Below are positions 1,595 through 62,659 of a DNA stretch of 64,000 nt, piece by piece. The position numbers and the translations under genes were made by a program. The stretch spans positions 1-64,000 of the forward strand of contig NW_018408922.1 in NCBI RefSeq assembly GCF_002113885.1, in the 5' to 3' direction. Numbering within the stretch: the first letter of the stretch is position 1; the number at the start of each line of letters is the position of its first letter. Source of the DNA: Mizuhopecten yessoensis. Its lineage: Eukaryota. The notes beneath the pieces were generated by a model, which ran no database searches, was not told the DNA's origin, and saw nothing but the letters and a program-made list of their open reading frames with translations.

Positions 1595-1623
1595 TCACGG
1601 CGCTGTCATCAACCGTACGAACT
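1595..1623 (-). CDS. CaML-A terminal coding exon (EFVRLMTAP*)
   Basis: Acceptor ttttattcttttacag|AG TTC GTA CGG TTG ATG ACA GCG CCG TGA; 29 nt like the last calmodulin exon. Confidence 0.9.
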
Positions 1624-4600
1624 CTGTAAAAGAATAAAATCAGATATATAGATACCTAGCTTTCCGATTAATGTACGGAAGCTAAAAGTGTAGCACTCAA
1701 TCTTTAATTGGTACAAAGAGTTCAACTACTTTGTTTAAATTATGTAGAAGAGCGTCTTCCGGAAATAATGAGGTACATCGTTAATTTAGATAGCCATTAA
1801 AATGTTACTTTTCAAGCCATGAAATTAATAGACTGACGCAAATAAGAAACTAATGAATAGACGTTTAGTTGATAGATGATATATGTTAATAATAACGTCT
1901 ATAGAGAAATAGGTTTGTGTGTACTATCAAGAGAAATAAGTTTGTGTGTACATAAAGTACAATTGTACAGGTTTTCTTATTGTCGTATTGAATACGGTAA
2001 CATAAAGGTATTAAGGTTCATTTTATAAGAGCGGGGTAGTTCAAACGTTATAATAAACCAACTCATGCATTTCAATATCGCACGCGTTTCATTACCCTAA
2101 ATGAGTCGATTCCCAAACTTAAGAAGATGTATGTCTTTAAACTGATACTGTTTTGAATCCTAACACTCACCGACGTAGTTGATGTGGCCTTCGAGGTCCG
2201 CGTGGGAATATTGGATCATTTCGTCCGTCTCCTCGTCGGTCAGTTTCTCGCCCAGAGTGGTCATAATGTCCTTCAGTTCTATGGCCGTGATGTACCCCCT
2301 CGCGTTCGAATCAAACACCTTAAACGCATCTTTGATTTCCTGCTCTGTATCCGTGTCGTTCATTTTCTTCGACATCAACTGTAGAAACTCTGGGAACTCG
2401 ATTGAGCCACTCTCTGTTGAGTACGTAATTCATTTTGCGTTTTTAATCATATTTATTACGTATTTCATTTTATAAATAGTACATTAAATTAAATACATAT
2501 TTCAAGGATCCAAAACAAACATTGTTTCATGCTATATTCTATGTATATTAATTGTATTTTCTTTATGTAAACGTGTAATTGTAAATGTCAGGTTTAAAGA
2601 ATTGCGTGTGATCAAAATAAATGGGATTTTACGCTCTTGTTTAAATCTCAGAATTTAGAAAGCACTCGCATTAAAGAAAGTTACCATTTCAATTCCAGTT
2701 TGGATTATTTACAAAGATTCTGAACTGAGTAGCCACATGGTAGCTTTAATTGGGTTTCTTCATCAGCAGGTGCTATCTAACATTGTATTTCTAGTGAGAG
2801 CTTTATATATACGTCTATACTTATATATAACTCATACTCGGACCCATGTGCGGTATCGTTAAAGCCACTTATACCAGCTGGATAATTAATTGCACTAAAA
2901 GTCACAAAACTGTCGAATCTTCATCTTAACATTTAGTTTCAACACATGGTTGTTCTAACGCCAGAAGAAGTGCCTGTGAGTAAAATTGATTAAAATATTT
3001 AACGTTTTTGCGGCTGCAGGGGCGTCAATTATAAACAGAGGTGAGCCCAGTGCTTGCATCATTAGTTATATTCAAACATTGTCACGGCTTCCGCAGTTTG
3101 GTCAGTTTACTAGATTCTAAAACACAAATCTGTAGCTGTTCGACATGCATAACATTGGAAATTCTCCATTAAATTTTAAACAAAGCTTTTTATAAAGTCA
3201 TGGTTCAGTGATTAAGTGAGTAAATCTCGTTATTGACGATATATGCTAAAGACATTGTTGCTATTGGTTACCACATCCAATCTCGCAATCTGTCAATAAA
3301 GGAACTGAAACAATTCAAAGTTACCAACATCACATGGAATTTTTCCATGTAGAAATAACAAGGTTATTTACTGTTTAAACATTTTAAAAGTGATCGACAC
3401 TTATGATGAAATACAGAGATATGCGCAAGTTTGTTGATAATTTTAAGATTAGCGATTTGTATCACTTTGTAAATGCCAACAGACAAGAGTAATAACATTT
3501 AACGGTAAGTTATCCTGATTGACCGTAATACTATTTAGAAATGTAATAAATACTACACCATACGGTAATGCAATTCTTTGTTGCACACAGAACGAAACCG
3601 GGGAAAGATTTAGAAGCAAAGTATAATAATGTTGAAAAATGAGTTAGGTTTTTTTAAGAAATACAAACACATACGATCATTGTCGACTTCGTTGATCATG
3701 TCCCTGATTTCCTGTTCCGTCGGTTCCTGCCCCAGAGACTTCATCACCGTTCCAAGCTCCACTACATCCACCGTACCGTCTCCGTCACGGTCAAATATCT
3801 TAAACGCCTCCTTGAATTCTGTACAGAGAAACACAATCAGTAAGGACAAGCTAAGACTAGTCAAACTTCGTTTCCTTTACTTACATGTAACATGTATACC
3901 AAGTGTATAACTTATCCTATTTCTTGCAAAAAGTAGGGTTCCAATATTTTCAAACAATACCTTTAAAATCAAAATTCAAAATGCGTCATTTCTTTTAGAA
4001 TCTAGTATTGGAATAATTTCTTCAATTCACTATAATACATATACCATGTGTCAGCAAAAGCGACGATGTATTTTTTAGTAAGATCTAGTTTTGAACCATT
4101 GGGGTTATAGAGAACTGTATCAAATGAAATATATTAAGCAAACGATTTTGATGGTTTTATGTTTCTTTAAACCCTTACAGTTATACTGTAAAAGAGGAAA
4201 TGTTCACAGTGTGGAAATGCTTGCATTTTTGCGTTAAATATATAAGTGCGAAAATAAATGCACGCAAATGTTTATATTATACAGATTATAGATATAATAA
4301 ATGTTAAGATTTCGGACTAACTGTTAGAGCTACAACGCGAATATATCCATACGCAAATATTTACACTTTTACAGAATTATAAATTTGCCGGTAGTAGAAT
4401 TAATTACAGTTCCACTGTACATACATACATACCATAAAATCGGATTTAACTGAAGATCTGTATCTAATTGTATCAATTTCCATGAGATTAATTGATTCTC
4501 ATAAGATAATCCATTAATTACATTAAATCTTTAGATAAATATATTTGTGTGTACTATCCAGAGAAATATATTTGTGTGTACTATCCAGAGAAATAGGTTT

Positions 4601-7600
4601 GTGTGTACTATCTAGAGAAATAGGTTTGTGTGTACTATCAAGAGAAATAAGTTTGTGTGTACTATTCAGAGAAATAGGTTTGTGTGTAATATCAAGAGAA
4701 ATATGTTTGTGTCTACTATCCAGAGAAATAGGTTTGTGTGTATTACCCAGAGAAATATGTTTGTGTGTACTATCAAGAGAAATAGGTTTGTGTGTACTAT
4801 CAGAGAAATAGGTTTGTGTGTACTATCAGAGAAATAGGTTTGTGTGTACTATCAAGAGAAATAAGTTTGTGTGTACTATTCAGAGAAATAGGTTTGTGTG
4901 TACTATCAGAGAAATAGGTTTGTGTGTACTATCAGAGAAATAGGTTTGTGTGTACTATCCAGAGAAATAGGGTTGTGTGTTTTATCCAGAGAAATATGTT
5001 TGTGTGTACTATCTAAAGCCGATCAGAATACCGCTTAATCCGGTCACAATCCGGTGAACGAGGAGAGAAAACCAGTCACATTTAAAAGTCTCCACCACAG
5101 TGTACTGTACAATCTTGGGTAAAGATTTAATATCTATATCAGGACTTAAGACTGGTGCCATTCATGCATGTTGTGTTCAATTTTAATTATTTTGAAAGTT
5201 GCACCGATACAAATTTTACTTTTATGGTGATCCCTTTCCCCCTACACGACATACACTAGAAGTTTTAGATATATACAGTAACATCCAAATCATAATATTC
5301 CGGATGGTATGGGTTCCTTTTCAGAAATGATTTATCAGAGTTATAATCATGCCAGAAAGGAAATAGTCATTGCATTACAGTTCTGGCAGTGGTATAGGAA
5401 AACTTTAACATAATTTAGTTTAATTTAACTGTGTTCGGATAACAGAGGTTTCCGTATTACTAAGGTTCCGGTTTACATAAATGCATCAAATGGATGGTAA
5501 CGAGTTTCTGATTGTTTCATGAATAATTTTTAATTCAAATTCAAACTTTAAAAACAAATACTAGGGACATCTTGTGTCTTAAAGAAACATGCGATATACA
5601 TTTTTAAATAGGAATTCAAGAACTTCCTGTGTGGCTAAGGTAATAGTTTTCCAGATGTATATGACAGTGACACCATTAGTTCTGGTTATTTCTTTTCATG
5701 TCTGTAAGCAATGAAGACTACTGTAGTACGATTCCAAAGTCCTCCCGTGACTGAAGGCCTATCAATCGATCGGGAGTCTTACAATCTTAATTTCAAATGA
5801 CATTAATAAAGAAAAAAACGCATCCTATTCCTACACTCAACTGAGCAGTTTATACAACATCTGTGATAAATATAGATTTGGGTGTGAAGCTGGCCTGCAA
5901 TGCGGGACCGCTACTGTGACTAATTGACGCCAGTTTGACGTGTAAATTCACTAAAAGAAACTTACAAATTAAACCAGAATCCACACATGATTTGAATCTA
6001 ACAACTACATTTCACTATAGAATTATCCGTTTGTTTCGATCATACATTCATACAAGATATAACCGATGGGACAAAAAGATGTTCATGTAATTTCATTAAG
6101 CAAATATAATTTGAAAACCTTGGAAATATTCATCAGTTCAGCACGTAAAATGAAACAAACAAAACGCCATCTACAATCACTAGAAATAAGAAAGCTACTA
6201 TCAAAACTAAACATTTAGAATGACTGAATGTTAACATACAAAGCAAAATAGAGTAAATATTTACTGTACCATATTTAACTCTATTGTCAGTTTAGGACGC
6301 ATCAGTAATAAAAAGGAATCCATGTCTGAACATAGATAGATCTACAGCTAAACGGGAAGGTGTGTAAACATCTTTTTATCATTACTAATTTACAACTGTT
6401 GGTTATAACTATTAATTTTTTAAAGATGTAATTCATGAAAACCTTCCAGACTAAATACACAAGGACACGATTGGAATTACCGAAGGAACCACAAAATCTT
6501 ATTTTATTCTGAAATGATGTCTGGTAAGAATAGGTGACCTAACTCAATGTATTGACCCAGTCTATACAAAGGACGATATATGTACAGGTACAATGACGAC
6601 AGTTTAGTCCACTAAGTATTGTAGTTTGATCCCAGTGATCACTGATTCGAATAGTTCACATGGGTCCCTGACGAGCTATCGATATTAACATAGCTATATA
6701 ATGTATAACTACACAAGCTCTGTACACTATATATATAGATACCATCTTGATACATACTTTTGACGACAATAAGGTCCGAAGATGCATTTAGATAACTAAG
6801 TTAAGATATAGAACGACCTTCACAATGATACCTAACGTCTAGAAGTGATCCGAAGGAGATATTTTTGTTGATTACATTATGTGTCCAATAAAAATCTATT
6901 ATTGCTCGTTCATAAGAGAACCGTCTTTCGCATAAAAAATACGACCAGCAGTCTGCGGGCTATACGTATTTACTTTGAATGCATAGCATCGGTTTGATGA
7001 ACTAAGTGTAGAAAACGTTATAGCTGACCTACATTATGCACACCCTTTCAGCATATCGCCTGTGTATTAACAAAATACGACTAAAAACACCACAGTTACA
7101 TCAACGTTAATAAGTACAAAAATAAATATGATAAATCTGCCATGTAAAAATAAAGCGCACGAGTTCAAATTAGATAATTTCTATATTGTTTCTACACATA
7201 AAAACTAACTGTTATCTGGTCCAATTATCATGCTAAGTTAACATGATTACTTTATAAATAGGTAGAGTTTCTGTATGTTCCAGTCCAGGGATGAAAGCAT
7301 AGTCAGCATTAGTTCAGAGAAAAACAAGGGAAGGATTCTTATCCTAATTACACAGAGGTGGATTTTTCTTAATACAAATAAATGCATACTAATCGTTTGA
7401 TTTCAGCGGAGAACTCAAAGTAGAGACTGCATTCTATACTGGCAAGGAGAAAAAAAAATGAAAACACCGTAATTGATAACCAATATAAATCGTTATTGAA
7501 AGCCTCATAAAATCATACAATATTGACCATTAATTAGCTAGTTATCAAGCTTTTCATGACGTAGTGTATCACAACCGAAACCAAAGCATACATCCAAAGT

Positions 7601-8266
7601 ATGTACCGAAGATTATATGAGTGGCAAAAAGTTAAAAAAAAAAACCTACACGCGTTCGTAATATGAGGATGTGAAATTCTCATTCGGTACAGTGAAAACC
7701 TACAATGTCGGCTTTCAGTGACTGTCGAAAACCGTGACGTAACTTGATGGAAGATTAGGATAATGACCTGTGTAGATCTATATTTATATTTATACACATG
7801 GAAATGGTAGTACACTCTGCAGTAAGGCAAAAGGGAGCGAAACGGGAGTGGTTGTAAGTGATAGAGTAATAAGGGTCATAAGTTATGATCATTTACTTAT
7901 GCTGTTGTTCTAACCTGAATGAAGTGACCTGACCAAGACTTGTCTCGTCTCCTCTACCGGAAAACAGTCAACTCGTACCATCCTTCATAGTACCTATCGG
8001 CCTCCTCTTCTCTACTTCACTTTATAAGTGGAGGGATTTATCTGTACTTTACGCTATCATAGACATAGTCGAGAAGCTCTATTAAAACGTAGTGTTTTGG
8101 AGCTGCAAGCTGCAGCACCATAATAGCTAATGAACTGCATAGAGAACTATGGCGTCTGACTAGATTACGTCACATACAGGAGTGTGCGTTCTGCGAGATG
8201 ATTTTAGGGTGTATTTCACCACGACGTAAACTTACCATCTATTTGTTCCTGTGAGAGATGTTCCAT
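1595..8266 (-). CDS. Calmodulin-like protein A (148 aa), join(8266-8236,3818-3675,2413-2171,1623-1595)
   Basis: Four coding exons (31+144+243+29 nt), all GT-AG with phase-1 introns. Protein: [148 protein letters not shown], colinear with calmodulin. Confidence 0.92.
1902..1951. repeat. Two-copy patch of the 27-bp minisatellite
   Basis: tagagaaataggtttgtgtgtactatcaagagaaataagtttgtgtgtac; same unit as 4535-5014. Confidence 0.85.
2171..2413 (-). CDS. CaML-A 243-nt exon (EF2 end, EF3, EF4)
   Basis: caacag|AG AGT GGC ... AAC TAC GTC G|gtgagt; overlaps ORF 2160..2378. Confidence 0.95.
3675..3818 (-). CDS. CaML-A 144-nt exon (EF1, EF2 start)
   Basis: ctctgtacag|AA TTC AAG GAG ... GAC AAT GAT C|gtatgt; overlaps ORF 3610..3864. 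Confidence 0.95.
4186..4374. mobile_element. Degenerate MITE-like element with CTGTAAAAG...CTTTTACAG termini
   Basis: Short terminal inverted repeats with internal GCGAA/CGCAAA motifs; a similar element lies at 32469-32676. Confidence 0.5.
4535..5014. repeat. 27-bp minisatellite (about 17 copies)
   Basis: Unit agagaaataggtttgtgtgtactatcc/a; the source of the spurious LCVLSREIG ORFs. Confidence 0.95.
8236..8266 (-). CDS. CaML-A first coding exon ([10 protein letters not shown])
   Basis: attttgcag|ATG GAA CAT CTC TCA CAG GAA CAA ATA GAT G|gtaagt; 31 nt, homologous to calmodulin ADQLTEEQIA. Confidence 0.88.
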
Positions 8267-9255: not shown

Positions 9256-9357
9256 CGTGAGCTAGGGCGATTCTGACATTACAGTTGTCCCTCCGTCTTA
9301 CTTGGTCACAGTGTAATTATTCTGGTAATTTGGGTTTGGCAGGAGCAGTCTTAAATA
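9256..9357 (-). promoter_or_regulatory. Probable CaML-A promoter and non-coding first exon
   Basis: TATTTAA at 9357-9351 (minus), then an approximately 70-nt leader ending in the strong donor ACG|gtgagt at 9256/9255. The TSS is inferred. Confidence 0.55.
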
Positions 9358-11998
9358 CGTTATATCAGAATATCAAATCTTTTTGGCCCATTTACAAAAT
9401 ATAGTCCTTTTCTCGAAAGGTCAGAGTCTTCTTAGTGTATTGCAGTTTAGTCGATAATTGAACACTGCGCTGTGATCTGGAACCGATCTGCCTTAATTAA
9501 CTATTCAGAACCAGCGCGGACAGCCCCGTATGAAGAACAATCACAGCCGTTAAATTGGTTATCAATATCTATAGCCTGTTTGTGCTTTGTAAAATCCTGT
9601 TTGATATACAGTTAACAAATCATACCTCTAAGACGCATTGAGGAAATGTTATGTTCACCGCCCTAAAACCACAAACCAACACATGTAGTGTTCTGTTTAC
9701 AAAAATAGATGGCGGTGTCTTACTGAAGCTGGGAGAGGGAATCAGTTGATATCAATGCAAGGCTCTTTATCTGTAGATTTAAGCGTCTTCTTGGTTATGG
9801 CTGTTGTGGTGGGGAACACTTGTAAGAGTCGGGCAACCAATCTTGTTGAAGCTATCAGCACAAGTATTACACGACATGCATTCTGTAGTGTAAGCTCCAC
9901 AATCTCAGATTAATCAGTACACTCGCTTGATTTGGAAGATGTTGTTTCAAAATAAACCGACAACAGACCATCCTCTATAAATGTTAACCCCAGCATCTTC
10001 CTTCACAGATTCCACTCCTTCGTTTTAGTTTAGAACTAAATGTATATGAAATAACATGCACGAGTAACTATTACACACCATCTTTACTCAGATATACTGA
10101 TTCTCTGCCATTCGGTAACTAACTGAACATAGTAATACTGCTGCATATTAATAATAAGAAACGTTTCCCCTGAGAGCCCTTAATTGTTCCAGACTCTTTC
10201 GCTTCTGACTATCAGATATGCAATCGCTGCTCCGGAATCCTATCATAGTATCGAGGCCAATGTTTTGTGTAAACATTTTGTTTTTACTTTAACCATCCGG
10301 GTAGAGATATGTTTTCGATAAAGAATAAAGATAACCAAGTTGAAACGTGCTTTATCTTATTTTGAGAAAAGAAATTAAATAAGGAAAGGCACGGATCACT
10401 GGTTCATAGGAAAACAGAAAGTATTCTGGAATAAATACTAGAACAAATTACTATTTTATGTTATTAAAAATACAAACAAAAACAATGAAACTAAAACGGT
10501 TTCTAATGCATATAATATGTGAAACATAATCGTTATTTGATCCGAACGTATTGTTTTCGAATTTATTTGAATATTTTATTTGGTTTATATCCACTGCATT
10601 TATCTATATTTATGCTATCAATTCAATAGCCTGGGGAAATCTCTTCATCTATACACATACGGTTATACCCCAATGCCTGTAGAAGTACTCTGTGGGTTTA
10701 TATGTTACAGCTACATTTAAGTGAACCCTTCATAGCACCACTTTACCGTTAAGACATATTTCCTGGTCTGCGTTTCTCCACATGCATGTATCTTTTCTAT
10801 AAATTTAAAAATACCAAAACCATCTGATTTATTAATTTGGCATACTGTCGTTATATTGGACAACTCAGAAGCCATGTGCTTTGCATTATCTAGGTCAATC
10901 GTCACTAACAGTGCAAAGTCAGGGCGATAACTAGTCTCACAAATGTGTGGTACAATATAACAACACATGCAACCGGTTTAAAGCAGTCAACTATTACTTT
11001 CATGCAAACTAATGCAGCAAAGTTTCAATATTTTTACCTACATGTTTCACATTTTTAGTAAATTTATCTACTTCCATGATTTAATGTTCGTTATAATGAC
11101 ATCAAATTAACATATTTTTTATAACCTTAAATTTATCGTTATCACAATTATGACAGTTCACTAGTAAATATTAAGGTTAATGATGCCGTGAAATGGAGGC
11201 CATCCCATTTCTCTATAGTGTTATAGTGATATTATGTATTTATATTATTTATATAAGATGACACATATTTCCCTTAATGCTTAATAGTTTTGTCAAAGGT
11301 CAGCGATTTGTGATACTGACTCCACGTTACTGTTTTTATAAACAGTTCGTCTCGGTCACTATCGCTTTCTCAGGTTCATATAACCATATGTTTAGCTCGA
11401 CAAAAGTCCATCATCAATAAATATGTCTACGGCATCACAATAGCTTCTTTATGACTTAATAAATGATTGTGCAGTTTTAGTTTGACATCCAAGGAACTTT
11501 TGCACTTCATGGTAAACTTCCAAAAAGGTGAAAGGCTAACAGCATTGCCAATGTTCCTTATAAATTTCCATAAATCTAATACAATACACAACAATGTATT
11601 TAAGGACGAAAAGGTAAGTCATATCTAAATTACAGTATTATATAATCAAACAATGTAAAAATAAGTGTTTTTTTATATTATATTGTTAAAATGCGTCATA
11701 TCCCACTTCAGGTGTGCACCCATATCATCATCATTAATTGATTGTTTTGAAATTTGCTTGATGTCGTTGCAGACTTTGGCACCAGAATCGCTACCAGTTA
11801 CCTTTTGAGTGACGTGCACCAAACCCGTGTCTGTCCGTTTGAAACGTATCTGAGGACATTACAATAGCCGAAGTATTAGATTACGGGTGACTGGAAACGA
11901 GACACGTTCATATAAAGAATTAGTCACAACTGTACAGGATAATTAAATACAATGAGCTACCAACATAAAACAATTCACATATTGCTTATACCCTGGCT

Positions 11999-12005
11999 TA
12001 TAAAA
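11999..12005 (+). promoter_or_regulatory. Candidate TATA box of CaML-B
   Basis: TATAAAA about 160 nt upstream of the ATG exon. Confidence 0.45.
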
Positions 12006-12159
12006 CCATCAAACCATGCATAAAAATCGATTCGTTCAGATATCAAAACAACCACAGTTTAGTACTAAACGGACACATTGAAGATTCCAACAGCTCATGA
12101 CTACCCGTATTATACGACTAATAGGCCCTATGTAGGCGAAAACAGGGATTTCCTTAAAA

Positions 12160-12162
12160 ATG
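12160..12162 (+). CDS. CaML-B ATG-only start exon
   Basis: aaaaATG|gtaagt, the classic calmodulin intron immediately after the start codon. Confidence 0.8.
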
Positions 12163-15100: not shown

Positions 15101-15478
15101 CGAAGAGGTAGAGGAGATGATTAGCGAGGCAGATCTTGACGGGGATGGTCTAATTAACTACGATGGTAAGGAATAAATATAACTTTTTAAGGAACTTTAT
15201 TCAACTTCTTTCGCCATGCATTTTTTAATTACATAATGCATTTACGTTTGTGTATGTGTTTCTAAAATCTCTGTGGTCTTTTTTGGAGACTTTTGTGTAA
15301 ATCTAGTTTATTTCTGGCTCACGTTTCAGTTATTTAATTAATATGATCACATGCCTACCTAACTTTTGAAACAAAATGTTTAAGTGTATTGTCTATTGAC
15401 TTAAAAACATCACTGTTGCAACCTAATGATGCACATTTTGTAACTGCAGAATTTCTGGCGATGATGTCGAAGAGTTGA
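12160..15478 (+). CDS. Calmodulin-like protein B (158 aa), join(12160-12162,12936-12993,13654-13797,14923-15165,15450-15478)
   Basis: [158 protein letters not shown]. Four canonical EF loops; about 70% identical to calmodulin by manual count against the remembered sequence. Confidence 0.93.
12936..12993 (+). CDS. CaML-B exon 2 ([19 protein letters not shown])
   Basis: tttttattattcaag|TCT ACG ... CAG ATA GCT G|gtgagt; 58 nt, phase 0 to phase 1. Confidence 0.85.
13654..13797 (+). CDS. CaML-B 144-nt exon
   Basis: ctccaatag|AA TTC CAG ... ACT GAT G|gtaagg. Confidence 0.95.
14923..15165 (+). CDS. CaML-B 243-nt exon
   Basis: tattacag|GC AAC GGT ... TAC GAT G|gtaagg. Confidence 0.95.
15450..15478 (+). 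CDS. CaML-B terminal exon (EFLAMMSKS*)
   Basis: taactgcag|AA TTT CTG GCG ATG ATG TCG AAG AGT TGA; 29 nt. Confidence 0.92.
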
Positions 15479-19473: not shown

Positions 19474-19511
19474 CTATCTCCAATCTTTCTTTGTTATCAT
19501 CATCACAAACT
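19474..19511 (-). CDS. CaML-C terminal exon ([12 protein letters not shown])
   Basis: cttttcgttccag|AG TTT GTG ATG ATG ATA ACA AAG AAA GAT TGG AGA TAG. Confidence 0.9.
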
Positions 19512-35227: not shown

Positions 35228-35304
35228 CTAAATTGCTATTTGTTCCTGTTGTTCACAATCCGGCTGGTTTACTCCTTCAGGATTTGCCAACATTTTTACA
35301 AATT
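35228..35304 (-). CDS. CaML-D terminal exon with C-terminal extension
   Basis: ccttttatcgttacag|AA TTT GTA AAA ATG TTG GCA AAT CCT ... GCA ATT TAG; 77 nt. Confidence 0.85.
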
Positions 35305-43935: not shown

Positions 43936-44147
43936 TCTGCCTGTTTGGTTTGTTCCAGCAGCCGTATGCAATGATTCCTGTGGGGACAGGTGAGTTATTT
44001 ACCCAAGTCGACAGCAAGGTACGTGTTTATCTTTTGACAATTTGTCTATGTTCAAAATGGCTGCTGCTATTCTGTCTGGCAAGGAATGAGAATCCTTCTA
44101 TTGCCACAATAAACCTTTCTGCATGACCACGCCACTTCGAGGTATCT

Positions 44148-44154
44148 CTTTATA
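44148..44154 (-). promoter_or_regulatory. Candidate TATA box of CaML-D
   Basis: TATAAAG on the minus strand, about 215 nt upstream of the ATG. Confidence 0.4.
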
Positions 44155-48467: not shown

Positions 48468-48493
48468 TCAGTGGGACATCATTTGTACAAACT
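48468..48493 (-). CDS. CaML-E terminal exon (EFVQMMSH*)
   Basis: ctttttatatttttcag|AG TTT GTA CAA ATG ATG TCC CAC TGA. Confidence 0.9.
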
Positions 48494-51400: not shown

Positions 51401-52122
51401 GCAATTAGCCATTTTGTTTCAAAATCTGGAAGTAAAATGAATTTCAGCCAATAGGACACATGTGTGTCACATACGATCTGTGGTAAACTATATACTTCCC
51501 AGTATTGTACGGGACATGGGTGCTACACGTATTACAGAAGACGTAATTGTACACAAATATCAATACACAGTGGAGAAACCCCCTCACTAAATTATGTATG
51601 ACCACGTAATGCATTGTAACAACAGCAAGTCATCCATTGAAGGGCGAGTGATTGACAGATTGTTATCAGGTAATTGACATTGTGTTCGGCATTCAACCGA
51701 CACGTTATGGTCTGGTTAACGAGATGGAGATATTTCAATTAGTGCAATGAGCCGCATCATCAGCCACGGGTCGTCTGCAGGGAGGAGAATGAAACTACAT
51801 GTACAGTTACAATGTGTTAGAGTTCCCTCCCCTTGGTTTTCAGCTTCAAAAAGATATGTGGCAGCAAAACAGAAATACAAATGACATTTCAGCATATTAC
51901 AACCGACATTTTAGTCTTCTGTTTGCCACCTTTGTTGCTATCTTAGTGGCAAATTAGATTGCGAAAATGTTATATATAACTATTAACACGTAAATAAACA
52001 GGTAAATAATTGTATGTATGATAGATGTATCTTGACCCTCTTTGGAACATAATTGTCCTTTTTCCCAAGGAAAATCAAGGCACTGTATCCGATAGATAAG
52101 GATGTGATGTTGTTAATGTACG

Positions 52123-52166
<44 letters not shown>

Positions 52167-55100
52167 TTTCTTCAGGAAAAAGACAAATTAAACACGTATA
52201 CAATGTATCACATTTTGCAGATTGGACATAAATATATTTTTATATATTATCACAGATATGAAATAATGGACGAAATATATAGTTATTTTTTGGTATAAGG
52301 ACACGTGATCATGAGGGATTTCACTCCTCGGATATCCCAAAGTTTGGCATTTGAAGATGTGCAAGTATATTTGTATATATTGAGCATGCGTGTTTTTGTG
52401 TAGTACATGTATCTTGGGATATCTGAGGAGTGATAGATTGGTTAATGCATTTAAGGAAATTGTGAGGTTTGTTTGTTAGGGTATAGTGTTAAGATGGCTA
52501 TTTTGGTTGAGGAACGAATAGATTGAGTCAAAGAAGATTGATTCTTTCATCATTTTAGCAAAATCTACCAGGGCAAAATATCCATAAAAAAATAAAACAC
52601 AAGCGTCAGATTGAAGAACACGTTCTCCGACCATCGTCTCCTGGTTCCCGTCACCAGTATCTCAGACGTCATCTGTATATCACTCCATACCGTATAGCTT
52701 ACACGTCATTGATTAAAATCAGAGACCGGAAAAAAAGCCAGGAATAATGAGGATTCCGATGTAATGATGACTCAGTGCATCTTACTTGTCTGGGGTATAA
52801 ATACAGGCTCATTATATGTCTGATGGGAATTACATGTGTAAGCACGCATCCCTTACCTCAATTAAATGACGTCTAGAGTTACTTTAATAAATAACTATAC
52901 TTAATTTGAATTTTTTTTCTTCTTCATTTTTGTTTATATATTTGTTTGTTTTAGCTAACGAATGTAGATGACAAAACTTCAGCTAAATAATGTAAGTTCT
53001 TTGTTTTGGTAAGTTAATGTGATCAATTATCATCGCGCACGTGCTGCCCCGAGGGAGATTGCGCGAAAACTGGACATTGTCTTTTTTGTCAGTATTGAGG
53101 AGCCACGCTGAACCCAGAGGGAATTCGTGAGTTTAAACCGTCGGCAACGAAGAATAAAACAGACTTCCGTATGGAAAATATAATGCTCATAACGACTATC
53201 TTATGGCTGTTGCAGCGCTATTGCCGAGCCCTAGTGGTTTACTGATGATTCTATGAATATTGATGAAGTAATATCAAAATAAACAGGCTTACTAGCCGTT
53301 AGTCTCATTAGCGAGATCAAATAGTTCACGGTGAAGCATACAGATTATTTTTGGAGGAAATAAAGATAAGAACAATGCCGATATATATTATTATGATTTT
53401 TTAAAACTTGCATATCGAAAAGTCAATGAAGATAATATTGTTTTATATATATCTTTCTACATAGTTTTAGGGTTCATGGTATTCTTCCGCGGAAATCTTC
53501 TGTTTGTTTACGTTCGTCACAGACCGAGGGTCTCGATGATCATTGAGCCTAGAAGTCATCTAAAATATATGATATTTAGTTGACTTTTTTATCGATGGAT
53601 GACTATCTCAGGTAGAAATATATGTATATATATTCATGTAGATAATAAACAGTTTATCGCATAAGTCATCAAGAGCACGTGGATAATTTCAAGTCCACCT
53701 TCGGTAGCCACTCGAAGGATACGCGTGCTCTCGATGAGAAACACAGTGTGATAATCTATAAATCCAATATAGCATAGGATCCTCAACCGAAGACAATATT
53801 AGATTTAGGACATCACATAACTTATATATATCTGAAACATCAAAAGATATATATATATACAAAGGAAGAAAAAACAGGTAAAATATAATGCTTTTTATGA
53901 GGCAAACATAATTATTTTCTCCATTCATTAATAAGCAATTAATGCGTGCCAATTCAGTGGGAATTCTATCCTTTTGTCGTACATAATAATGACTATTTTC
54001 TGTCGAGTACTTTTACCTTCATAATCGATCTCGCCATCCCCATTCCTATCAGCCTCCGCGAGCATATCCTTGACCTCGTCGTCTGTAAGCTTCTCACCGA
54101 TACAGGTCAACGCCACTCGGAGCTCCTCGAAATTTATTTTGCCGCTATTGTCTCTATCAAACATTTTAAACGCATGGCTTAGTTCCGCTTCTACCTCCGT
54201 TGTTGCCATCTTTACTCTCATCATTTTTGTAAAGTCGTCAAAGTTGATCATTCCGTCTCCTAGCAACAAATTAGTAAACAAATTAAAACGGAGCTTTTTA
54301 AGCTTTAGTATGAATGTTTCGAATTGTAATATTAAGAAAAAATATTGTTCAATTTTTATTACGTCTAATAATGATTTAGTGAATTGATTGCGTCAAAAAC
54401 CACAATGCTTCTCACAAATCCTGAATGTGTAATATTTGAAATATGCTTCGGTTTGAGATATGAAACATTATACATTGTAAAACACAGTGATATGGTTGTT
54501 ATCAGATGCTTCCAATGAACAATAAAAAGCAAACAACAAAATATTCTTACAAGAACATTTGAAATGTAGATACCCGATAACATATGTTATATCTAACATG
54601 CTTCTATATTAAAAAATTATATTCCGTCCAATAAATAAAATTAAAAACATATAAAGTTGATTGAAGCGGCAATAAAACTGATATTTGCCGTTATTTTAAT
54701 GGGCCTTTTGAGTGTACGGGATCTGTATGGAGCGTCGCTGTCTATTGTGTTGCGGGACATGCCAGTAAAGCGATGGTATTTCGGCACGATACTCTGGCAT
54801 TCTAAGGGGTCGTAGTAGGGTCGGTGATTTACGTAAACATGTAACAGAAAGACGCAATCTAAACGCTGAAGTCAGCACAATTGAACATTAAAAATGTTTC
54901 ACATGGTCAGAAGATATGGCCAGAATTTAGTAGAGTTACCTTATATAAACACCTACATATGTATAAACTAAGGTACGCTGAATAAAGTACCGACTAATAA
55001 TCACGGTCATTTTGTGGTGATCAATTGTGCGTTCATGTCTTTTATGACTTAAGACCAAAGCTATGTTGATAACGCCTAATCTGAATAAAAGGAAGAAATT

Positions 55101-56889
55101 TAGATAAAAAAAAATGTGTATACAAAATGTACAAGTATTTCAAAAAACACTGTTCATGTACAGATGTCGGAAATAATTTGTCTCCGACGATGGGATGCAA
55201 TCCTAAGATTGTGGCGTGCCAGCGCAAAAAGATCAAAATGCTGCTTGACGACCGACTGACACCACTGCAGGCTGGAGATTGAGAAAATGATATACCTGAC
55301 GTTCGCCACTGCCCGTTGTAAGAGGCGGCTAATGTGGGAACCCCCTGCAGAACTGGGAGTTTGCTTTTGGGCCCTTTACTTCGAGACACAAAAGTCACCG
55401 ATATATATCTAGTGCACCCATTGCACATTGTGAATCTTACATTTTATCTTTACTCCCTAAATTAAAGAATTTTATTTCCTTACTTCATCCCAAGCGATAA
55501 ATCCACTGTCCGCCTAAGTGTTGAACGTTCGCCTGCACGCGGGCAAGGCAATGGATTCTGTCTGCAGGCCGGGCATACCAAAGTCCTTAAAAATGGTAGT
55601 TGTTATTCTCGGGTTTGGTTTTGTTTATTTTTGTTTAACGTCCTGATAACAGGTAAGGTCATTTAAGGACGTACCATTATGTGTGTAGTGTATGCGTGCT
55701 TGCGTGTATGTATGCAGGAGACAGGGTATGTTGGTGTGCTTGCCTCTTTGTGATAGCGCGAATCAGACATTATAGTGCTATCTCACTGAAATACCATGCC
55801 GAAGGCACCGAGCACAGCATTCCGCCCGGTCACATTATACGTCAACGGATAAACCAGTTGTTGCCATTCTCTGTTAAACGTTAAGCATTAGGGTAATGAC
55901 AATAGTTGGTTAACCGTTATCAGTATAATCTGACCGGGTCTGGTATAAGCTGTTGCATTGGTAATATGACGCTAAACCAAATAAAACCAAACCAATCGGA
56001 AAATCCCACTGTCGTTGGTATTTATAGGGAACATGATTTAGATTCATTCTCACAATACTTTTTTTTTGTCACGAGTTCGAGATTCTGTTTCTCGCATATC
56101 ATAAAAAACCAATGGGACGACACGCTGCATAAGTTTAATTCACATTGTAAAAGTATCTGCAAATAGAGACACACAAATATAATGTACCATTAAACATTGC
56201 ATTCGATCCGTTAAATCCTAAGTTCTAGATGTTGAAATCATTCATTATCCTGATCTTGTATGGTAAAAACTAACAATTTTGACGGAAAGAGCCGTGATTC
56301 AATGTCCATTATGATTAGCTTGGAACCGAATATTTAACCAACGGAAAATAGTCTCTAAACTTGATACTCGGTTCCTAATATTTACTTTGAATTTTGGTCT
56401 GGCATCGCCGTACACGTTTGAACCCAGTTGGGACTTACTTTTAAATGGATATTGATTGATGTTGACAGGGTTTGAAGCGATACATGAACATGTTTGAGTA
56501 TATTTGTTTGCAACAGTTACTTAAGCGAAGGAAGCAATGGTTCGTCCTCTGTGTCGCTGTTACACATCGGTTTTCATTATTCATTGTAAAATGTATTTCA
56601 GCACAGTCTCTACAGAGCATGAAGTCGACTGTACATGTCTTTGTAGCGCTATGGATCCGAGTGCAGTCAATATTCTGGTACCATACGTTTTATAAAGCGA
56701 TTAATTAATGATGGTTTGAATATCGATTGATTAATTGTCTGGCTCGAACTAAGGAAGAGATCTATTGTCCAGGTGAAAAAAGGATTCTAGTTATAGTCCG
56801 GGAAAACCTTACATGTACTGTAGATAGGAATATTGTCAGGTATCGCTTGGTACAGTACAAACACACACAGGTGAGCAGTCTCGTGGGTG

Positions 56890-56920
<31 letters not shown>

Positions 56921-59900
56921 AGTTTCAACTTACAAAAGTTGTAGAAACAATGAAGTTTTAAAGTCTTACGGGCGCGAGAAAGAATAAACCAGTTGTATTC
57001 CATGGTATGACCGTATGGTGCGATTATTTTTGAAGCTGCTTTCAGAAATGAAATTGCAAGCTATATGTACAGTGTAGTTTGATGGTAAATACGAACGTCA
57101 GTGCCTACGAACGGAACACTGTATCCCTCCGCGATGTTGTCTCCGTGGGATTCAACTATTCCAAATGAACAAGTTGTCAAATAAGAAAAGATGACACTCC
57201 GGAACGATGGATCCGGACGTTCCATAAGTTCATCAGGCCAGTACTGTACTTATTATCACAGGCATAGACGTATATAATATAGGGTATGGATCAGAAATAG
57301 TAACCGCGCTTGTATTTACACTTACACAGCTTAGAAATATAATGTACAAACCAGATGAATATATATATATATATCACAAACAACGTATGAGTAGACTAGC
57401 GCTTCAAAAACGTTACTCAATTACCACCTTGTTACAACAGCATTGCCTGTTACAATATTGTACCTGAGATCCCAAGGGGCCCAATTTCTGTTCGACTGCG
57501 CAACCAATTAGGGTTCCAATTTTCTATAGGGAATTTGCATATGTGTTATGTACACCAAGATACCCCCGTGAAGTCAATTATACAGCCCCAAATGATGAAT
57601 AGGTTATTTACACCGACGAGTATTAGTGTGAAAGGTCAAAGGTCGCAATCAACAGTTTGAAGATAACTCGATCCGTTACAATCCTCCATACCGCACTACT
57701 AATATCACTTGATATTCTCTCTAGGTGTTAAACAGTTTTCATTAAGTCCAGAAACGTGTCACTTTTATTCAATCTAAACATGTATATAAACATTCTAATT
57801 GTTTTCAATTATTTGGCATACAGAGAATTATATACACACTTTCCACAACCTGATATGGTACTATAAGCCCGATGGCTGGCAAGGTCGAGTATTGGTATAC
57901 GTCTCGAATGTTGATGCCCACTAAAGATCGATATTGACCAAATTGTATTCTTACCAAATTAAAAAACAACAACCTTATATTGTGTATTATTAAAATGTAG
58001 TAAAAGGGGAAAAAAATCAATAGGTCAAACTTTGTAGAATAACAAGAGACTGTACGACGTCCCCTTAAGGGCATTCTATGGAATGATTATCTTTGATTCA
58101 ATGTGTAGTAAAACGCGTTATACTGCCATTATTTACGAAAACAAGTTTTGACTTTATAACGGGGTTTGACGAAATATCGAGAGGTTCGAGTAAAGCAGTT
58201 GATAAAAAAGTAAAAAGATGTAAACAAAATTAAATATTGAAGTACAATGGTGCATGGCTACCCAGGTGGCAAATTGAAAATAGAAACTTTGGACTACAGC
58301 GAGGTTTTACGCTAAGTTGACTTGCCAAACGATACGGAACGTGAACGTAGACATATGTCAGTCTTATCTATATGTATTTACAATAGATATATATATATGT
58401 ACACTCTGCCAAGTTTTGCGGTCTGTGATTAAATTAAATTGGTCAACTCGGCACCGACGTTGTCCTAGTATCGATATTACGATCTAACACTGAGTACAGC
58501 TACACCATGGGGAAAAAGCCAGACTTCACTTAAATTGGTTTGTTAGGTAAACTTTTTTCACTTTCTTTATCATAAATGTGGTTGTTTTCTGTATCCGTGC
58601 GTGCGTCTGCTAAACAACAGATACGAGTGAGACTTATAATTCTATCAATATAGGAAAGATAAATTCAGTTCCTTCATTGTACTTTCGAATGTTTCTGTAG
58701 ATCCCATAAATATTGTAGATAGCTGTACAATGTTTGGTACAGTTATACAATGTAAGTGGTAAACACGAGCCCCACTCGTGCAACACACTTGACTGTGAAG
58801 AAATGATCTAGTCACGAACCATTCGTCCGTTTGTAAAACGAAGCAAGATGCTTAATCAGGATTACGAGTTAGTTAAAGTAACAGAATTGATACTTCCAGA
58901 AGAAAACTTTGTTTTTTTTTCTTTTATTTTTAAATCATATTCTAAAAGAACTGTTGGTCGTATTAATAATGTTCCTTTATCACACTCTGTCTCGTTAGTG
59001 GCAGTTTCGACATTGTTCATTCTTTAAGGATCCCTGTACCACTGTCAGAAACTGTAACTGAGCATTGGAAACTGTCTGTCCCGGCATGACTACAGCTTTG
59101 GTAAATTAATGCTGAAAAGAAAGCCATATCTTGCGGGTCTTTCATGAAAAAAATATAAAGACGAAATAGACAACAAATAATCAGCAAATATGTGTAAAAA
59201 TTCAGTGGGACCTTTCTAACCGACTAAGCTATCTTATCAACGAACGTGCCCTGACCCAACTGTAATACAGTTATACATTTATCAAAAAAAAAAAAAAAAA
59301 AAATATGGACAGGTTACTGTACATACGAAATACCACGGTGTCATGGGACAGAGATCCTTAATATCTAGTCTTTCATTACCGGAAGGCAAACGGGGGAGTT
59401 AAGTTTAAAAAGACGTTACTTCCGGTCGAAAACTTACCGTCTATGTCTTTGTCTTTTAACAGATCCTCCACTTCCACCTTTGTGGGATTCTGTCCTAAGG
59501 CCCGCATTACCAGGGTGAGGTTCTCCGCTGTAACCTTGCCGCTGTTATCAAGGTCAAACATCTTAAATGTCTCGCGTAAACCTGTAAACAAATAAAATAT
59601 TTAAATCACTTGTAATTTGCACGAATTTGAATGAAGCAAAATATAGCCATATTAACTGATATTTTATAACTTGAAGCAAGTTGTTCAAATTAATAATAAT
59701 ACTATGATATCCATCTTTATATTCAATGACATAATTAGTAAATAGGTTTTGAAAATACCATGTTTTGATTTGTGCGATTTGATACTGTGAAATTAACAGC
59801 GAACGTACCTTGCATCTCTTGAATAAGAAAATATGACACTAAGCCTAAACTTATACTTACGCGCAAGTTCCGTTTCCGACAGTTCCGGAAGAGTCTATAA

Positions 59901-62659
59901 AGTAACCATGACAACCGTCTCAGTTTTGTGAGAAAATATTATCAGCATTAGGGTACATACATATTTAATGAGAACATGTTTCCAATAATTGCCAATCAAC
60001 ACTATCGTTAATTATATAAATGCAAAGTGACAGAAGTTATTCATTTATATTCGTACGTAATAATAACATTACATGATGTAACAGAACGAAGCTTGTATTT
60101 TATCCCGACAATGGGGCAAGTATCTTGTTAACGGAGAGCTTTTAATCTCATACTTACTACAAACGAGTAAACAGTTCTCCTTATCCGCTCAAGTAAACCT
60201 TTTATTATTCAATACATTAGGATTGTTTATTCAATTCTGACCGGAGCGGCGAAGAAATACAGTTTGTTTGAAGTTCTACGTTCAGGGAAGGAAACCTCAA
60301 GATTAAATAAAATTGTGTGCATTTCTTAAAAGTCTATTGAAACAAAATCAAACAAACCCCAATTGTACACAAACAATACCAATACGAATTAGATTTAGGT
60401 ACATATGTACTTGACGGTCACGTTTTATAATGAAACCCTACATAGTATACAATATTACGCAATAAACGTGTGGTATGATTACGTTTTGCGCCACACAAAA
60501 ATATTTTACGAACATTACAAATGTATCTCTGTTCCAATCTACAACGTGCTATACCCGGATGTGATTGCGTTGGTTTACAGTCTTTTTCAGTACACTTACC
60601 TACGTGAAAAAAATAACTTGCGTAGGTCGGAAACTTGAAGATTCGTCCTCGCAAACGAAGGAGAACAAGTTTTAGACATTCTATTGCACAAAGATGATAC
60701 AAATTATACTTTTATATCTACGAAAACATGACATTCTGGTCTGGCTGATACATGTAAGAACCAGATCTAAAAACCTACATCGACATCCATATATAAATAC
60801 ACTGTAAATATTTCTTTGTTAAAAAACTGTTTAGTATAGAAACCTTTGTAATATAGACCCTCATACAAATCCCGTTGTATAAACACATACATGTACATTG
60901 AACCTGTTATAAACGTTTCATGTTGTATTCGAACTGTGTTATGTTGTAAAATGCGATTAAAGCGGGGACTCTTGCACTCGTGCGGCTAAGATATTTTAAA
61001 AATATTAGCCACACTCGTGAAATATATTTGGTATTACTGAAGACACTGTTAGATATCCTCTATATACTTGTGGTTTGTGTTAGAGTAAATATTTGTATGC
61101 TACATAATACCTGTGATCTGTGTTTAAATTAAGGTTATATGCTACCTTATACAATTTACATGTACCGGGTATTTGTGTTAAAGTAATTAAAGTGATATGC
61201 TATCTTATACATTTTACATGTACTTGTGATTTGTGTTAGAGTTAAGGTTATATGCTACCTTATACGATTAACATGCACCTGTGATTTGTGTTAGAGTTAA
61301 GGTTATATGCTACCTTATACAATTTACATGTATCGGTTATTTGTGTTAAAGTGAAAGTGATATGCTACCTTATACGATTAACACGCACCTGTGATTTGTG
61401 TTAGAGTAAAGGTTATATGCTACCTTATACAATTTACATGCACCGGTTATTTGTGTTAAAAGTTAATGTTATATGATATCTTATACAATTTACATGTACC
61501 TGTGATTTGTGTTAGAGTTAAGATTATATGCTACCCTATACAATTTACATGTACCGGTTATTTATGTTAGAAATTAATGTTATATGATATCTTATACAAT
61601 TTACATGTACCTGTGATTTGTGTTAGAGTAAAGATTATATGCTACCTTATACAATTTATATGTACTTGTGATTTGTGTTTAGGTAAACTTGTGAACCGAT
61701 GTACGTTACATGATATGCTACCAAACGCATTATACCTATGACTTGTAATAGAGTTAAGGCTATATGCTACCTTACCTTATACCTATGATTTGTAATAGAG
61801 TTAACGCTATATGCTACCTTACACATTATACCTTTGAATTGTAATATTAATTAAGGCTATATGCTACCTTACATTATACCTATGATTTGTAATATTTAAT
61901 TAAGACTATATGCTACCTTACACATTACACCTATGATTTGTAATAGAGTTAAGGCTATATGCTACCTTACTTTTTACCTATGATTTGTAATAGAGTTAAG
62001 GCTATATGCTACCTTACACATTATACCTATGTTTTTGTAATATAAATTAAGGCTATATGCTACCTCACATTATACCTATGATTTGTAATAGAGTTAAGGC
62101 TATATACTACCTTACATTATACCTTTGATTTGTAATATTAATTAAGGCTATATGCTACCTCACATTATACCTATGATTTGTAATAGAGTTAAGGCTATAT
62201 GCTACCTTACATTATACCTATGATTTGTAATATTAATTAAGGCTATATGCTACCTTAAACGTTTTGATTGCTGTTTGCTTTATTCTCTACATTTATAACA
62301 CAGGTCATGCAGGTATTACTAGCTGTAATGTCAAGCTACTTCATTCTTATCTTTTCTGTATACATGTTCATTTCAAGTGTGCCATCAATCTATCAAATAA
62401 GCTAGCATTACCATCTATAAGCAATACTTTTTGTTAAACTCTTCTAACATAGAAATACATTTCACAGTATTGTAGCATATATACTTAAGTTAAAGATAGG
62501 TATTTAAACAATAATCTGCATGCAGACGACACAACTGTTATTTAAATACAGTCTTGCTACCCATTTCTTCTCTGACAGGTGTAACATCCCAATAAAAAAA
62601 ATACGCAATCAAAGATATATATCAAATGTTAAGACAAAGACAATATATACACTTACCAT
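48468..62659 (-). CDS. Calmodulin-like protein E (149 aa), join(62659-62657,59894-59861,59581-59438,54259-54017,48493-48468)
   Basis: MTLPELSETELARLRETFKMFDLDNSGKVTAENLTLVMRALGQNPTKVEVEDLLKDKDIDGDGMINFDDFTKMMRVKMATTEVEAELSHAFKMFDRDNSGKINFEELRVALTCIGEKLTDDEVKDMLAEADRNGDGEIDYEEFVQMMSH*; the most divergent member. Confidence 0.9.
48836..49605. repeat. 61-bp minisatellite built from two ~30-bp subunits
   Basis: Unit gtaccacagcgtcaacacacaaaatctaaattatcatggtctaaacacaccaggacaaaat. Confidence 0.95.
52125..52166. repeat. (ATA)14 microsatellite
   Basis: Perfect trinucleotide run. Confidence 0.97.
52321..52433. repeat. 20-bp inverted repeat, MITE-like
   Basis: tcactcctcggatatcccaa ... ttgggatatctgaggagtga (19/20 match). 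Confidence 0.75.
54017..54259 (-). CDS. CaML-E 243-nt exon
   Basis: ttgttgctag|GA GAC GGA ... TAT GAA G|gtaaaa. Confidence 0.95.
55505..55995 (+). mobile_element. tRNA-derived SINE (Meta-core-like), interrupted
   Basis: Decayed tRNA-like head, cataccaaagtccttaaaaatggtag, core taagcattaggg..ttggtt..tcagtataat.tgaccggg and an (AAACC)-type tail. Family recognised from memory of mollusc MetaSINEs. Confidence 0.65.
55611..55882 (-). mobile_element. 5'-truncated SINE of a related family, inserted antisense
   Basis: Minus strand reads actggtttatccgtt..gtataatgtgaccggg..ttcagtgagatagcactataa ... ggacgttaaacaaaaataaacaaaaccaaacc. Confidence 0.7.
59438..59581 (-). CDS. CaML-E 144-nt exon
   Basis: ttgtttacag|GT TTA CGC GAG ... 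ATA GAC G|gtaagt. Confidence 0.94.
59861..59894 (-). CDS. CaML-E exon 2 (TLPELSETELA)
   Basis: ttactttatag|ACT CTT CCG GAA CTG TCG GAA ACG GAA CTT GCG C|gtaagt; 34 nt. Confidence 0.82.
61068..61690. repeat. 55-bp minisatellite (about 11 copies)
   Basis: Unit cctgtgatttgtgttagagttaaggttatatgctaccttatacaatttacatgta. Confidence 0.95.
61729..62257. repeat. 47-49-bp minisatellite (about 11 copies), related to the 55-bp array
   Basis: Unit cctatgatttgtaatagagttaaggctatatgctaccttacattata. Confidence 0.95.
62657..62659 (-). CDS. CaML-E ATG-only start exon
   Basis: atagacATG|gtaagt. Confidence 0.75.

What the first reader, a model, noticed from the sequence alone, without database searches (positions are those of the whole stretch)
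1595..62659. Tandem cluster of five intact, strongly divergent calmodulin-like genes with no canonical calmodulin
Seen: five complete genes in 61 kb with the same intron positions and phases (144-nt and 243/246-nt core exons), no frameshifts or stops, and no alignable introns. Known: true calmodulin is nearly invariant across animals, and this exon plan is the invertebrate calmodulin layout (the vertebrate 107+136 exons joined as 243). Even the closest paralog (B) is only about 70% identical by my count. Inference: an old tandem expansion kept by selection, acting as a diversified Ca2+-sensor set. In a mollusc it could serve shell calcification, muscle, cilia or sperm, but function cannot be read from sequence.
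Basis: partly seen in the sequence, partly recalled or inferred. Interest (0 to 1): 0.8.

Follow-up and report, generated by a model that had tools for sequence, protein, structure and literature searches.

The report
Scallop calmodulin-like gene cluster
Five intact, old, selectively maintained calmodulin-like genes are really there, but they are an ordinary slice of a much larger calmodulin gene array in the Yesso scallop, a family already known to be expanded in bivalves.

Summary
The window (start of a 2.30-Mb Mizuhopecten yessoensis scaffold) has five calmodulin (CaM)-like genes, each with a 144-nt and a 243/246-nt phase-1 core exon, AG/GT splice sites and an open frame of 148-171 codons. 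Both assembly gaps lie in introns. None is canonical CaM (46-73% identity).

- Pecten maximus has E, D, B and A in the same order and orientation.
- pN/pS is 0.006 for B, 0.05-0.08 for A, 0.10 for D (one exon) and 0.15-0.21 for E.
- The best solved-structure matches of E and C are all calmodulin.
- A and B orthologues appear as spliced transcripts in another scallop-like species.
- Gene C has no orthologue evidence, only an intact frame.

The framing is a window artefact. The same scaffold carries about 26 such genes in 392 kb, including near-canonical CaM copies. The genome has about 69. Gene E is already in RefSeq as "neo-calmodulin-like", and bivalve enrichment of this family is published.

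New here: B is nearly invariant across scallops, A has a conserved degenerate C-lobe, and B carries a conserved upstream ORF. Interest is modest.

The parts
1595..8266 (-). Gene A, 148 aa. Coding exons 8236-8266 (ATG joined to the 'exon 2' codons), 3675-3818, 2171-2413, 1595-1623. EF3 loop has Arg at position 5. EF4 loop has His at position 1 and Glu at position 5.
   Evidence: Orthologues: P. maximus XP_033736484.1 (94% and 92% in the two core exons) and a spliced transcript contig L035. pN/pS 0.05-0.08.
11952..12023 (+). Conserved 23-codon upstream ORF in the 5' UTR (exon 1) of gene B
   Evidence: The core KTIHILLIPWLI is identical in three species, with synonymous changes only.
12160..15478 (+). 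Gene B, 158 aa. Exons 12160-12162 (ATG only), 12936-12993, 13654-13797, 14923-15165, 15450-15478. All four EF loops are canonical and the N-terminal extension is acidic.
   Evidence: Orthologues in P. maximus (L034) and species X (L031 genomic, L035 spliced RNA) have 126 of 127 compared core codons identical, with saturated synonymous sites. pN/pS 0.006-0.008.
19474..24702 (-). Gene C, about 160 aa. Exons 24648-24693 (or from an in-frame ATG at 24702), 20990-21133, 20445-20690 (246 nt), 19474-19511. EF3 loop has Gln at position 5.
   Evidence: No orthologue and no close paralogue were found. Neutral simulation keeps the frame open in 0.4-5% of replicates at d = 0.2-0.5.
23010..23140 (.). Assembly gap inside gene C's intron between exon 2 and the 144-nt exon. 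No reading frame crosses it and continuity is untested.
35228..43935 (-). Gene D, 171 aa. Exons 43930-43935 (ATG GCG), 41418-41463, 38226-38369, 36004-36246, 35228-35304. EF3 loop has Glu at position 3 and Arg at position 5. It has a 24-residue C-terminal extension.
   Evidence: In P. maximus, exon 1, exon 2 (100% amino-acid identity) and the 144-nt exon (96%) are conserved downstream of E, and the called product is also 171 aa.
42163..42313 (.). Assembly gap inside gene D's intron 1. The flanks are colinear with the P. maximus intron.
48468..62659 (-). Gene E, 149 aa, identical to RefSeq XP_021339437.1 'neo-calmodulin-like isoform X1'. Exons 62657-62659 (ATG only), 59861-59894, 59438-59581, 54017-54259, 48468-48493. 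EF1 loop has Asn at position 12.
   Evidence: Orthologues in P. maximus and Ylistrum balloti are 75-81% identical. pN/pS 0.15-0.21.

Best explanation
These are five real, intact, single-copy calmodulin-derived paralogues of the Yesso scallop. Each is an old gene with its own orthologue in other scallops, shown for A, B, D and E. They lie inside a very large head-to-tail array of CaM and CaM-like genes.

Each encodes a small cytosolic protein of two EF-hand pairs and nothing else. The likely mechanism is the calmodulin one: Ca2+ binding to the EF loops opens hydrophobic clefts in each lobe, and these clamp helical target peptides.

The paralogues differ in how many loops look competent:
- B: four, under CaM-grade constraint
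- C, D and E: about three
- A: N-lobe only, so its C-lobe probably binds partners without Ca2+, as a myosin light chain does

They also differ in their tails and, by inference, in their targets and expression.

Shown here: gene structure, intactness, orthology, synteny, purifying selection, and splicing of the A and B orthologues. Inferred: Ca2+ stoichiometry, targets and tissue roles.
For: - Exon plan, phases and open frames.
- E is identical to a RefSeq model.
- Conserved order and orientation in P. maximus.
- pN/pS of 0.006 to 0.21.
- Each of A, B and E groups with its own orthologues, and the five do not form a clade.
- PDB best matches are all calmodulin.
- A contig without introns carries both the A and the B orthologue, while a genomic contig of the same species has the introns. 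The RNA-derived contig leaves the genomic sequence exactly at ATG|GT.
- EF-loop deviations recur in the orthologues of A and E.
- No hydrophobic N-terminus in any model: read.
Against: - There are no expression data for M. yessoensis itself.
- Gene C has no orthologue, an unproven first exon and a gap in its intron.
- D's selection estimate rests on 47 codons.
- The Ca2+-binding predictions come from loop consensus rules alone.
- The family tree, built on 80 columns, is largely unresolved.
Confidence: 0.85

Rival explanations
1. Gene C, and possibly E, is a decaying or functionally relaxed duplicate rather than a maintained sensor.
For: - C has no orthologue in the protein searches and no paralogue above 53%.
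- Its C-lobe is only about 52% identical to CaM.
- Its N-lobe exon has many non-synonymous changes since it last shared sequence with a canonical CaM exon (pN/pS 0.26 for the pair, perhaps about 0.4-0.5 on C's own branch).
- E evolves fastest of the measured genes.
Against: - C has an intact frame with four canonical splice junctions.
- Only 0.4-5% of neutral replicates stay open at d = 0.2-0.5.
- Three of C's four EF loops are canonical.
- E has pN/pS of 0.15-0.21 in two comparisons, and its Asn-12 is conserved.
- The protein searches also missed proteins known to exist, such as P. maximus B, so a blank for C is weak evidence.
Confidence: 0.12
2. The proteins are secreted or extrapallial biomineralisation factors, like the pearl-oyster CaM-like protein with its extra C-terminal tail, rather than intracellular sensors.
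For: - D has a 24-residue C-terminal extension.
- CaM and CaM-like transcripts are abundant in Yesso scallop mantle (PMC4391921).
- Expansion of the CaM-A-like family has been linked to calcification in giant clams (PMC11700175).
Against: - No model begins with a hydrophobic signal-like segment; the N-termini are acidic.
- B's near-invariance fits a hub intracellular partner.
- No tissue data link these five genes to mantle.
Confidence: 0.08
3. Some members, A above all, act mainly as Ca2+-independent light chains or IQ-motif subunits rather than as Ca2+ switches.
For: A's EF3 (Arg at loop position 5) and EF4 (His at position 1) deviations are conserved in P. maximus and species X under pN/pS of 0.05-0.08. 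The degenerate C-lobe is therefore itself under selection.
Against: A's N-lobe loops are canonical, so it can still sense Ca2+. No partner is known.
Confidence: 0.3

Closest known systems
Canonical calmodulin genes of molluscs (for example the four abalone CaM genes, PMC6171432, and this genome's own CaM at scaffold C201 633.8-635.6 kb)
   Same: - Five-exon plan with the first exon ending at ATG (B and E).
- A 144-nt exon and an undivided 243-nt exon, with phase-1 introns at the same codons.
- Four EF-hands and about 149 residues.
   Different: - Only 46-73% identical to CaM.
- One to two non-canonical loops in A, C, D and E.
- N- or C-terminal extensions in B, C and D.
- A has lost the intron after ATG.
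Animal calmodulin-like proteins (vertebrate CALML3/NB-1; pearl-oyster CaM-like protein; RefSeq 'neo-calmodulin-like' and 'calmodulin-A-like' models of bivalves)
   Same: CaM-derived proteins made only of EF-hands, diverged from CaM and lineage-specific. Gene E already carries such a RefSeq name.
   Different: Here they form part of an array of dozens of genes, with evolutionary rates that differ about 30-fold between neighbours.
Bivalve-enriched EF-hand/calmodulin orthogroup (OG18 in PMC8382680: 38.2 genes per bivalve against 19.5 in other molluscs) and the CaM-A-like expansion in giant clams (PMC11700175)
   Same: The same family-level expansion.
   Different: In the passages I retrieved, those papers report gene counts. 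I saw no description there of array structure, synteny or per-gene constraint.
Plant CaM/CML families
   Same: Dozens of CaM-like paralogues with varying numbers of competent EF-hands, often in tandem.
   Different: An independent expansion. From general knowledge, plant CMLs are mostly intronless or have other exon plans.

Membership tests
Canonical calmodulin | Near-invariant sequence (over 90% identity to animal CaM) | tested here: not met
   46-73% identity over CaM residues 1-141. The exact canonical exon lies elsewhere in the genome, at C201:635366.
Canonical calmodulin | Four canonical 12-residue EF loops | tested here: inconclusive
   Met by B only. A, C, D and E each have one or two deviant loops. 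Binding itself was not measured.
Calmodulin-like (CaM-derived) proteins | Two EF-hand pairs with no other domain, and a best match to CaM rather than troponin C, centrin or light chains | tested here: met
   The top 60 PDB matches of E's and C's C-lobe exons are all calmodulin or NB-1, colinear with CaM residues 60-140. Database hits are CaM and CaM-like proteins.
Calmodulin-like (CaM-derived) proteins | Shares the CaM gene's intron positions and phases | tested here: met
   144-nt and 243/246-nt phase-1 exons in all five, as in this genome's canonical CaM and in abalone CaM (PMC6171432). The first intron varies.
Functional (non-pseudogene) paralogue | Intact frame, conserved orthologue, and dN/dS well below 1 | tested here: met
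   Met for A, B and E, and for D on exon 1. For C only the intact frame is met, so C is inconclusive.
Functional (non-pseudogene) paralogue | Transcribed and spliced in this species | not testable with these tools
   Only indirect evidence: RefSeq isoform models for E and spliced A and B orthologue transcripts in another species.

The most novel reading that the evidence does not exclude
The window is the middle of a single array of about 44 genes over roughly 0.8 Mb, formed by the end of scaffold C201 joined to the start of C5595. This array would hold the canonical calmodulin gene and dozens of derivatives. Within it, neighbouring genes evolve at rates that differ about 30-fold. One derivative, B, is as invariant as calmodulin itself and carries a conserved peptide-coding upstream ORF, making it a second, scallop-specific 'universal' Ca2+ sensor.
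Probability: 0.45. Interest if true: 0.5.

Novelty: new member of a known kind. Interest (0 to 1): 0.3.

Why it matters
Calmodulin is a textbook invariant protein that usually comes in a few gene copies. A genome that keeps about 69 genes with the CaM exon plan is a natural experiment in how a hub sensor diversifies. Most sit in arrays that include the canonical gene, and constraint ranges from CaM-grade (B) to fast-evolving (E).

For bivalve biology, the cluster gives defined, orthologous candidates for Ca2+ handling in shell, muscle and cilia.

As a discovery it is incremental. The family expansion is published at the count level, and at least one of the five genes (E) is already annotated in RefSeq.

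Tried and rejected
- **Orthologue of gene C.** A two-sequence profile search found A's orthologues but nothing above 55% for C. The exhaustive representative search returned only generic multi-EF-hand proteins. The own-genome search found no paralogue above 53% and no haplotig. Because the word-based searches also missed proteins that exist, these blanks are weak evidence.
- **Other ORFs in the window.** Ten were scanned against Pfam. The only hits were sub-threshold Gemin6 matches in two frames of a 20-nt minisatellite at 47288-48208, which I rejected as spurious.
- **A 5'-UTR intron in gene A.** I tried to derive one from the RNA contig L035. The breakpoints (window 11761 and 8358) lack GT/AG in this genome, so it remains open whether the 3.4 kb between them is an intron or an insertion.
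- **Family tree.** The tree on the C-lobe exon is mostly unresolved, so I draw no branching order from it.
- **Literature.** I found no dedicated description of a scallop CaM array.
- **Joined models.** Spliced protein models were not sent to any search, folding or look-up tool. All searches were exon by exon, by reference. Exons were joined only inside scripts, read from the window file, to check frames, identities and substitution counts.
- **Gaps and human sequence.** N stretches were not filled. No contig looked human.

Full report
**What is in the window**

The window is 64,000 bases with two N runs, at 23010-23140 and 42163-42313. It is the first 64 kb of a 2,296,768-base scaffold of a 988-Mb genome in 82,659 contigs.

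A six-frame scan for EF-hand loops, followed by phmmer of the seed exons against all open segments, found exactly ten calmodulin-type exons and no further fragments. Each gene has one 144-nt exon and one 243-nt exon (246 nt in gene C). All are flanked by AG and GT, all enter and leave in phase 1, and none has a stop. Four genes are on the minus strand. Gene B is on the plus strand, head-to-head with A.

**Complete gene models**

- **Last exons.** They were found as AG + (A/G)A + F-x-x-M-type tails ending in a stop.
- **Second exons.** For B, C and D they were found by their (S/T/A)-x-(E/D)-Q-(I/V)-x motif in front of GTGAGT.
- **Gene E.** Its model is identical over all 149 residues to RefSeq XP_021339437.1, "neo-calmodulin-like isoform X1 [Mizuhopecten yessoensis]". 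That protein is encoded on a contig of exactly this scaffold's length, which also fixes the organism. E's first exon is ATG alone at 62657-62659, the finding's end coordinate.
- **Gene B.** Its first exon also ends in ATG, at 12160-12162, followed by GTAAGT. This is conserved in two other species.
- **Gene D.** It starts ATG GCG | GTAAGT at 43930-43935, as in Pecten maximus, where the called product is also 171 residues.
- **Gene A.** Its start codon is joined to the exon-2 codons at 8236-8266 ([10 protein letters not shown]). P. maximus has MEHLSQDQID.
- **Gene C.** Its start is unproven: either an in-frame ATG at 24702 or an acceptor at 24693.

Joined inside a script, all five give open frames of 148, 158, about 160, 171 and 149 codons, with only AG/GT junctions.

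**The gaps**

The first gap lies in C's intron between exon 2 and the 144-nt exon. The second lies in D's intron 1. No reading frame crosses either. For the D gap, sequence blocks on both sides are colinear with the P. maximus intron at a similar spacing, which supports the join. The C gap could not be checked. The N stretches were not filled.

**Relation to calmodulin**

Identity to canonical CaM residues 1-141 is A 60%, B 73%, C 62%, D 63% and E 46%. The five are 39-57% identical to one another.

The most divergent C-lobe exons (E and C) have calmodulin or CaM-related NB-1 as all of their top 60 solved-structure matches. These align colinearly to CaM residues 60-140, not to troponin C, centrin or light chains.

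The exon plan is that of this genome's own canonical CaM gene (144-nt exon near C201:633.8 kb, 243-nt exon at C201:635,366). It is also that of abalone CaM genes, which have five exons, a first exon that encodes only the start codon, and no intron in exon 4 (PMC6171432). That the vertebrate exons are 107 + 136 nt is from my own knowledge.

Paralogue introns do not align, apart from one repeat shared by C and E.

**Age, synteny and selection**

On P. maximus chromosome LR736840.1 (6.93-7.04 Mb), the orthologues of E, D, B and A lie in the same order and relative orientation as in the window. A further CaM-like gene lies beyond A. Ylistrum balloti has an E orthologue.

An unnamed species ("X") gave two Logan contigs:
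- L031 is genomic and carries B with its introns.
- L035 has no introns and carries both the A and the B reading frames, head-to-head, with the start codons 520 nt apart.

B's core exons are 100% identical in nucleotides between the two contigs. L035 departs from the genomic sequence exactly at ATG|GT. It is therefore derived from spliced RNA, and it confirms the predicted junctions for the orthologues.

Nei-Gojobori counts on the core exons:

| Gene | Compared with | Amino-acid identity | pS | pN/pS |
|---|---|---|---|---|
| B | P. maximus, species X | 126 of 127 codons | 0.58 and 0.96 | 0.006-0.008 |
| A | P. maximus, species X | 93% and 90% | 0.74 and 0.78 | 0.05-0.08 |
| D (144-nt exon only) | P. 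maximus | 96% | 0.38 | 0.10 |
| E | P. maximus, Y. balloti | 75% and 81% | 0.63 and 0.59 | 0.15-0.21 |

In a tree of 77 C-lobe exons, A, B and E each group with their own orthologues (SH-aLRT 99, 89 and 99). The five window genes do not form a clade. The rest of the tree is unresolved.

**Gene C**

No orthologue was found, no paralogue above 53% and no haplotig. Its 144-nt exon is unusually close in nucleotides to canonical CaM exons: 82-84% identity and pS 0.45, against 0.74-0.92 for the other four genes. Its C-lobe exon is saturated (pS about 0.95). This hints at exon-scale gene conversion.

Under neutral substitution at d = 0.2-0.5, only 5% to 0.4% of replicates keep C's frame open. I therefore take C as probably maintained, with less certainty than the others.

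**Predicted Ca2+ sites**

These are inferences from loop rules.
- B has four canonical loops.
- A has Arg at EF3 position 5, and His at position 1 and Glu at position 5 of EF4. Arg-5 and His-1 recur in P. maximus and species X.
- C has Gln at EF3 position 5.
- D has Glu at position 3 and Arg at position 5 of EF3.
- E has Asn at EF1 position 12, also present in both orthologues.

No model has a hydrophobic N-terminus, so the proteins are probably cytosolic.

**The wider picture**

Searching the genome with B's C-lobe exon gave 149 matches. After extraction, 68 loci plus E have a clean CaM-type C-lobe exon of 225-255 nt, in phase 1 and flanked by AG and GT or GC. Of these, 38 are exactly 243 nt.
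- About 26 lie on this scaffold between 2 and 392 kb, nearly all on the minus strand. They include near-canonical copies at 292.6, 325.0, 368.6 and 377.6 kb.
- About 18 lie at the end of scaffold C201 (634-998 kb of 1,027 kb), beginning with the true canonical CaM.
- About 11 lie at the end of scaffold C5594.

The P. maximus gene next to A is the orthologue (85%) of C201's last CaM-like gene, in the orientation expected if the end of C201 abuts the start of this scaffold. The two arrays may therefore be one of about 44 genes. This is an inference. About 25 kb of C201 beyond that gene is unaccounted for.

"Five genes without a canonical calmodulin" thus describes the window, not the locus.

**What is already known**

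- An EF-hand/calmodulin orthogroup is significantly enriched in bivalves, with 38.2 genes per species against 19.5 in other molluscs (PMC8382680).
- Giant-clam work reports expansion of the calmodulin-A-like family (PMC11700175).
- The Yesso scallop mantle transcriptome has 35 CaM-related unigenes (PMC4391921).
- Gene E and the orthologues of A and E are RefSeq models.

I found no paper that describes the array itself.

**Verdict**

The feature is a set of new members of a well-known kind. Its modest added value is B's CaM-grade invariance, A's conserved half-dead EF-hand set, the 30-fold spread of rates between neighbours, and the size of the array.

Joined protein models were not submitted to any search tool. 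Searches were exon by exon, by reference. No contig looked human.

Noticed in passing
window 11952-12023 (+): A conserved 23-codon upstream ORF lies in gene B's 5' UTR. The core KTIHILLIPWLI is identical in M. yessoensis, P. maximus and species X, with only synonymous differences and the same stop position. The surrounding roughly 250 nt of UTR is also about 75% conserved, although synonymous sites in the coding sequence are saturated.
   Followed up: partly
window 43919-44920 and 45646-45959: About 1 kb directly upstream of gene D's first exon is about 70% identical to P. maximus (L032:40851-41859), and a second block of about 310 nt is 73% identical. This is conserved non-coding sequence, probably a promoter or enhancer.
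   Followed up: no
window 20990-21133 (gene C, 144-nt exon): This exon is 82-84% identical in nucleotides to canonical CaM exons elsewhere in the array (pS 0.45), while C's other core exon is saturated. This suggests exon-scale gene conversion from a canonical CaM copy.
   Followed up: partly
G000 C201:998077 and the window start: The P. maximus gene next to A is the orthologue of the last CaM-like gene on scaffold C201, in the orientation expected if the end of C201 joins the start of this scaffold. The arrays of C201 (about 18 genes, starting with the canonical CaM at 633.8-635.6 kb) and C5595 (about 26 genes) may be one.
   Followed up: partly
window 8266-12160; L035:2459-2980: A and B are head-to-head. 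In species X one RNA-derived contig carries both spliced mRNAs with the start codons only 520 nt apart, which suggests a shared bidirectional promoter with overlapping 5' ends. In M. yessoensis and P. maximus the start codons are about 3.9-4.0 kb apart. The extra 3.4 kb has no GT/AG at the breakpoints.
   Followed up: partly
window 47288-48208: A 20-nt minisatellite with 46 copies creates long false ORFs (216 and 173 aa) and spurious sub-threshold Gemin6 Pfam hits. Other minisatellites lie at 2-506, 4533-5013, 37802-38160, 38542-39702 (28 nt, 41 copies), 48840-49606 and 61108-62257.
   Followed up: yes
window 20300-20420: A palindromic, MITE-like element of about 110 nt lies in gene C's last intron. 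It matches on both strands at about 30 other genomic sites.
   Followed up: no
G000 C201:885547 and C5595:345951: Two array members lack a clean C-lobe exon, and the first has an in-frame TAG. They are likely pseudogenes within the arrays.
   Followed up: no
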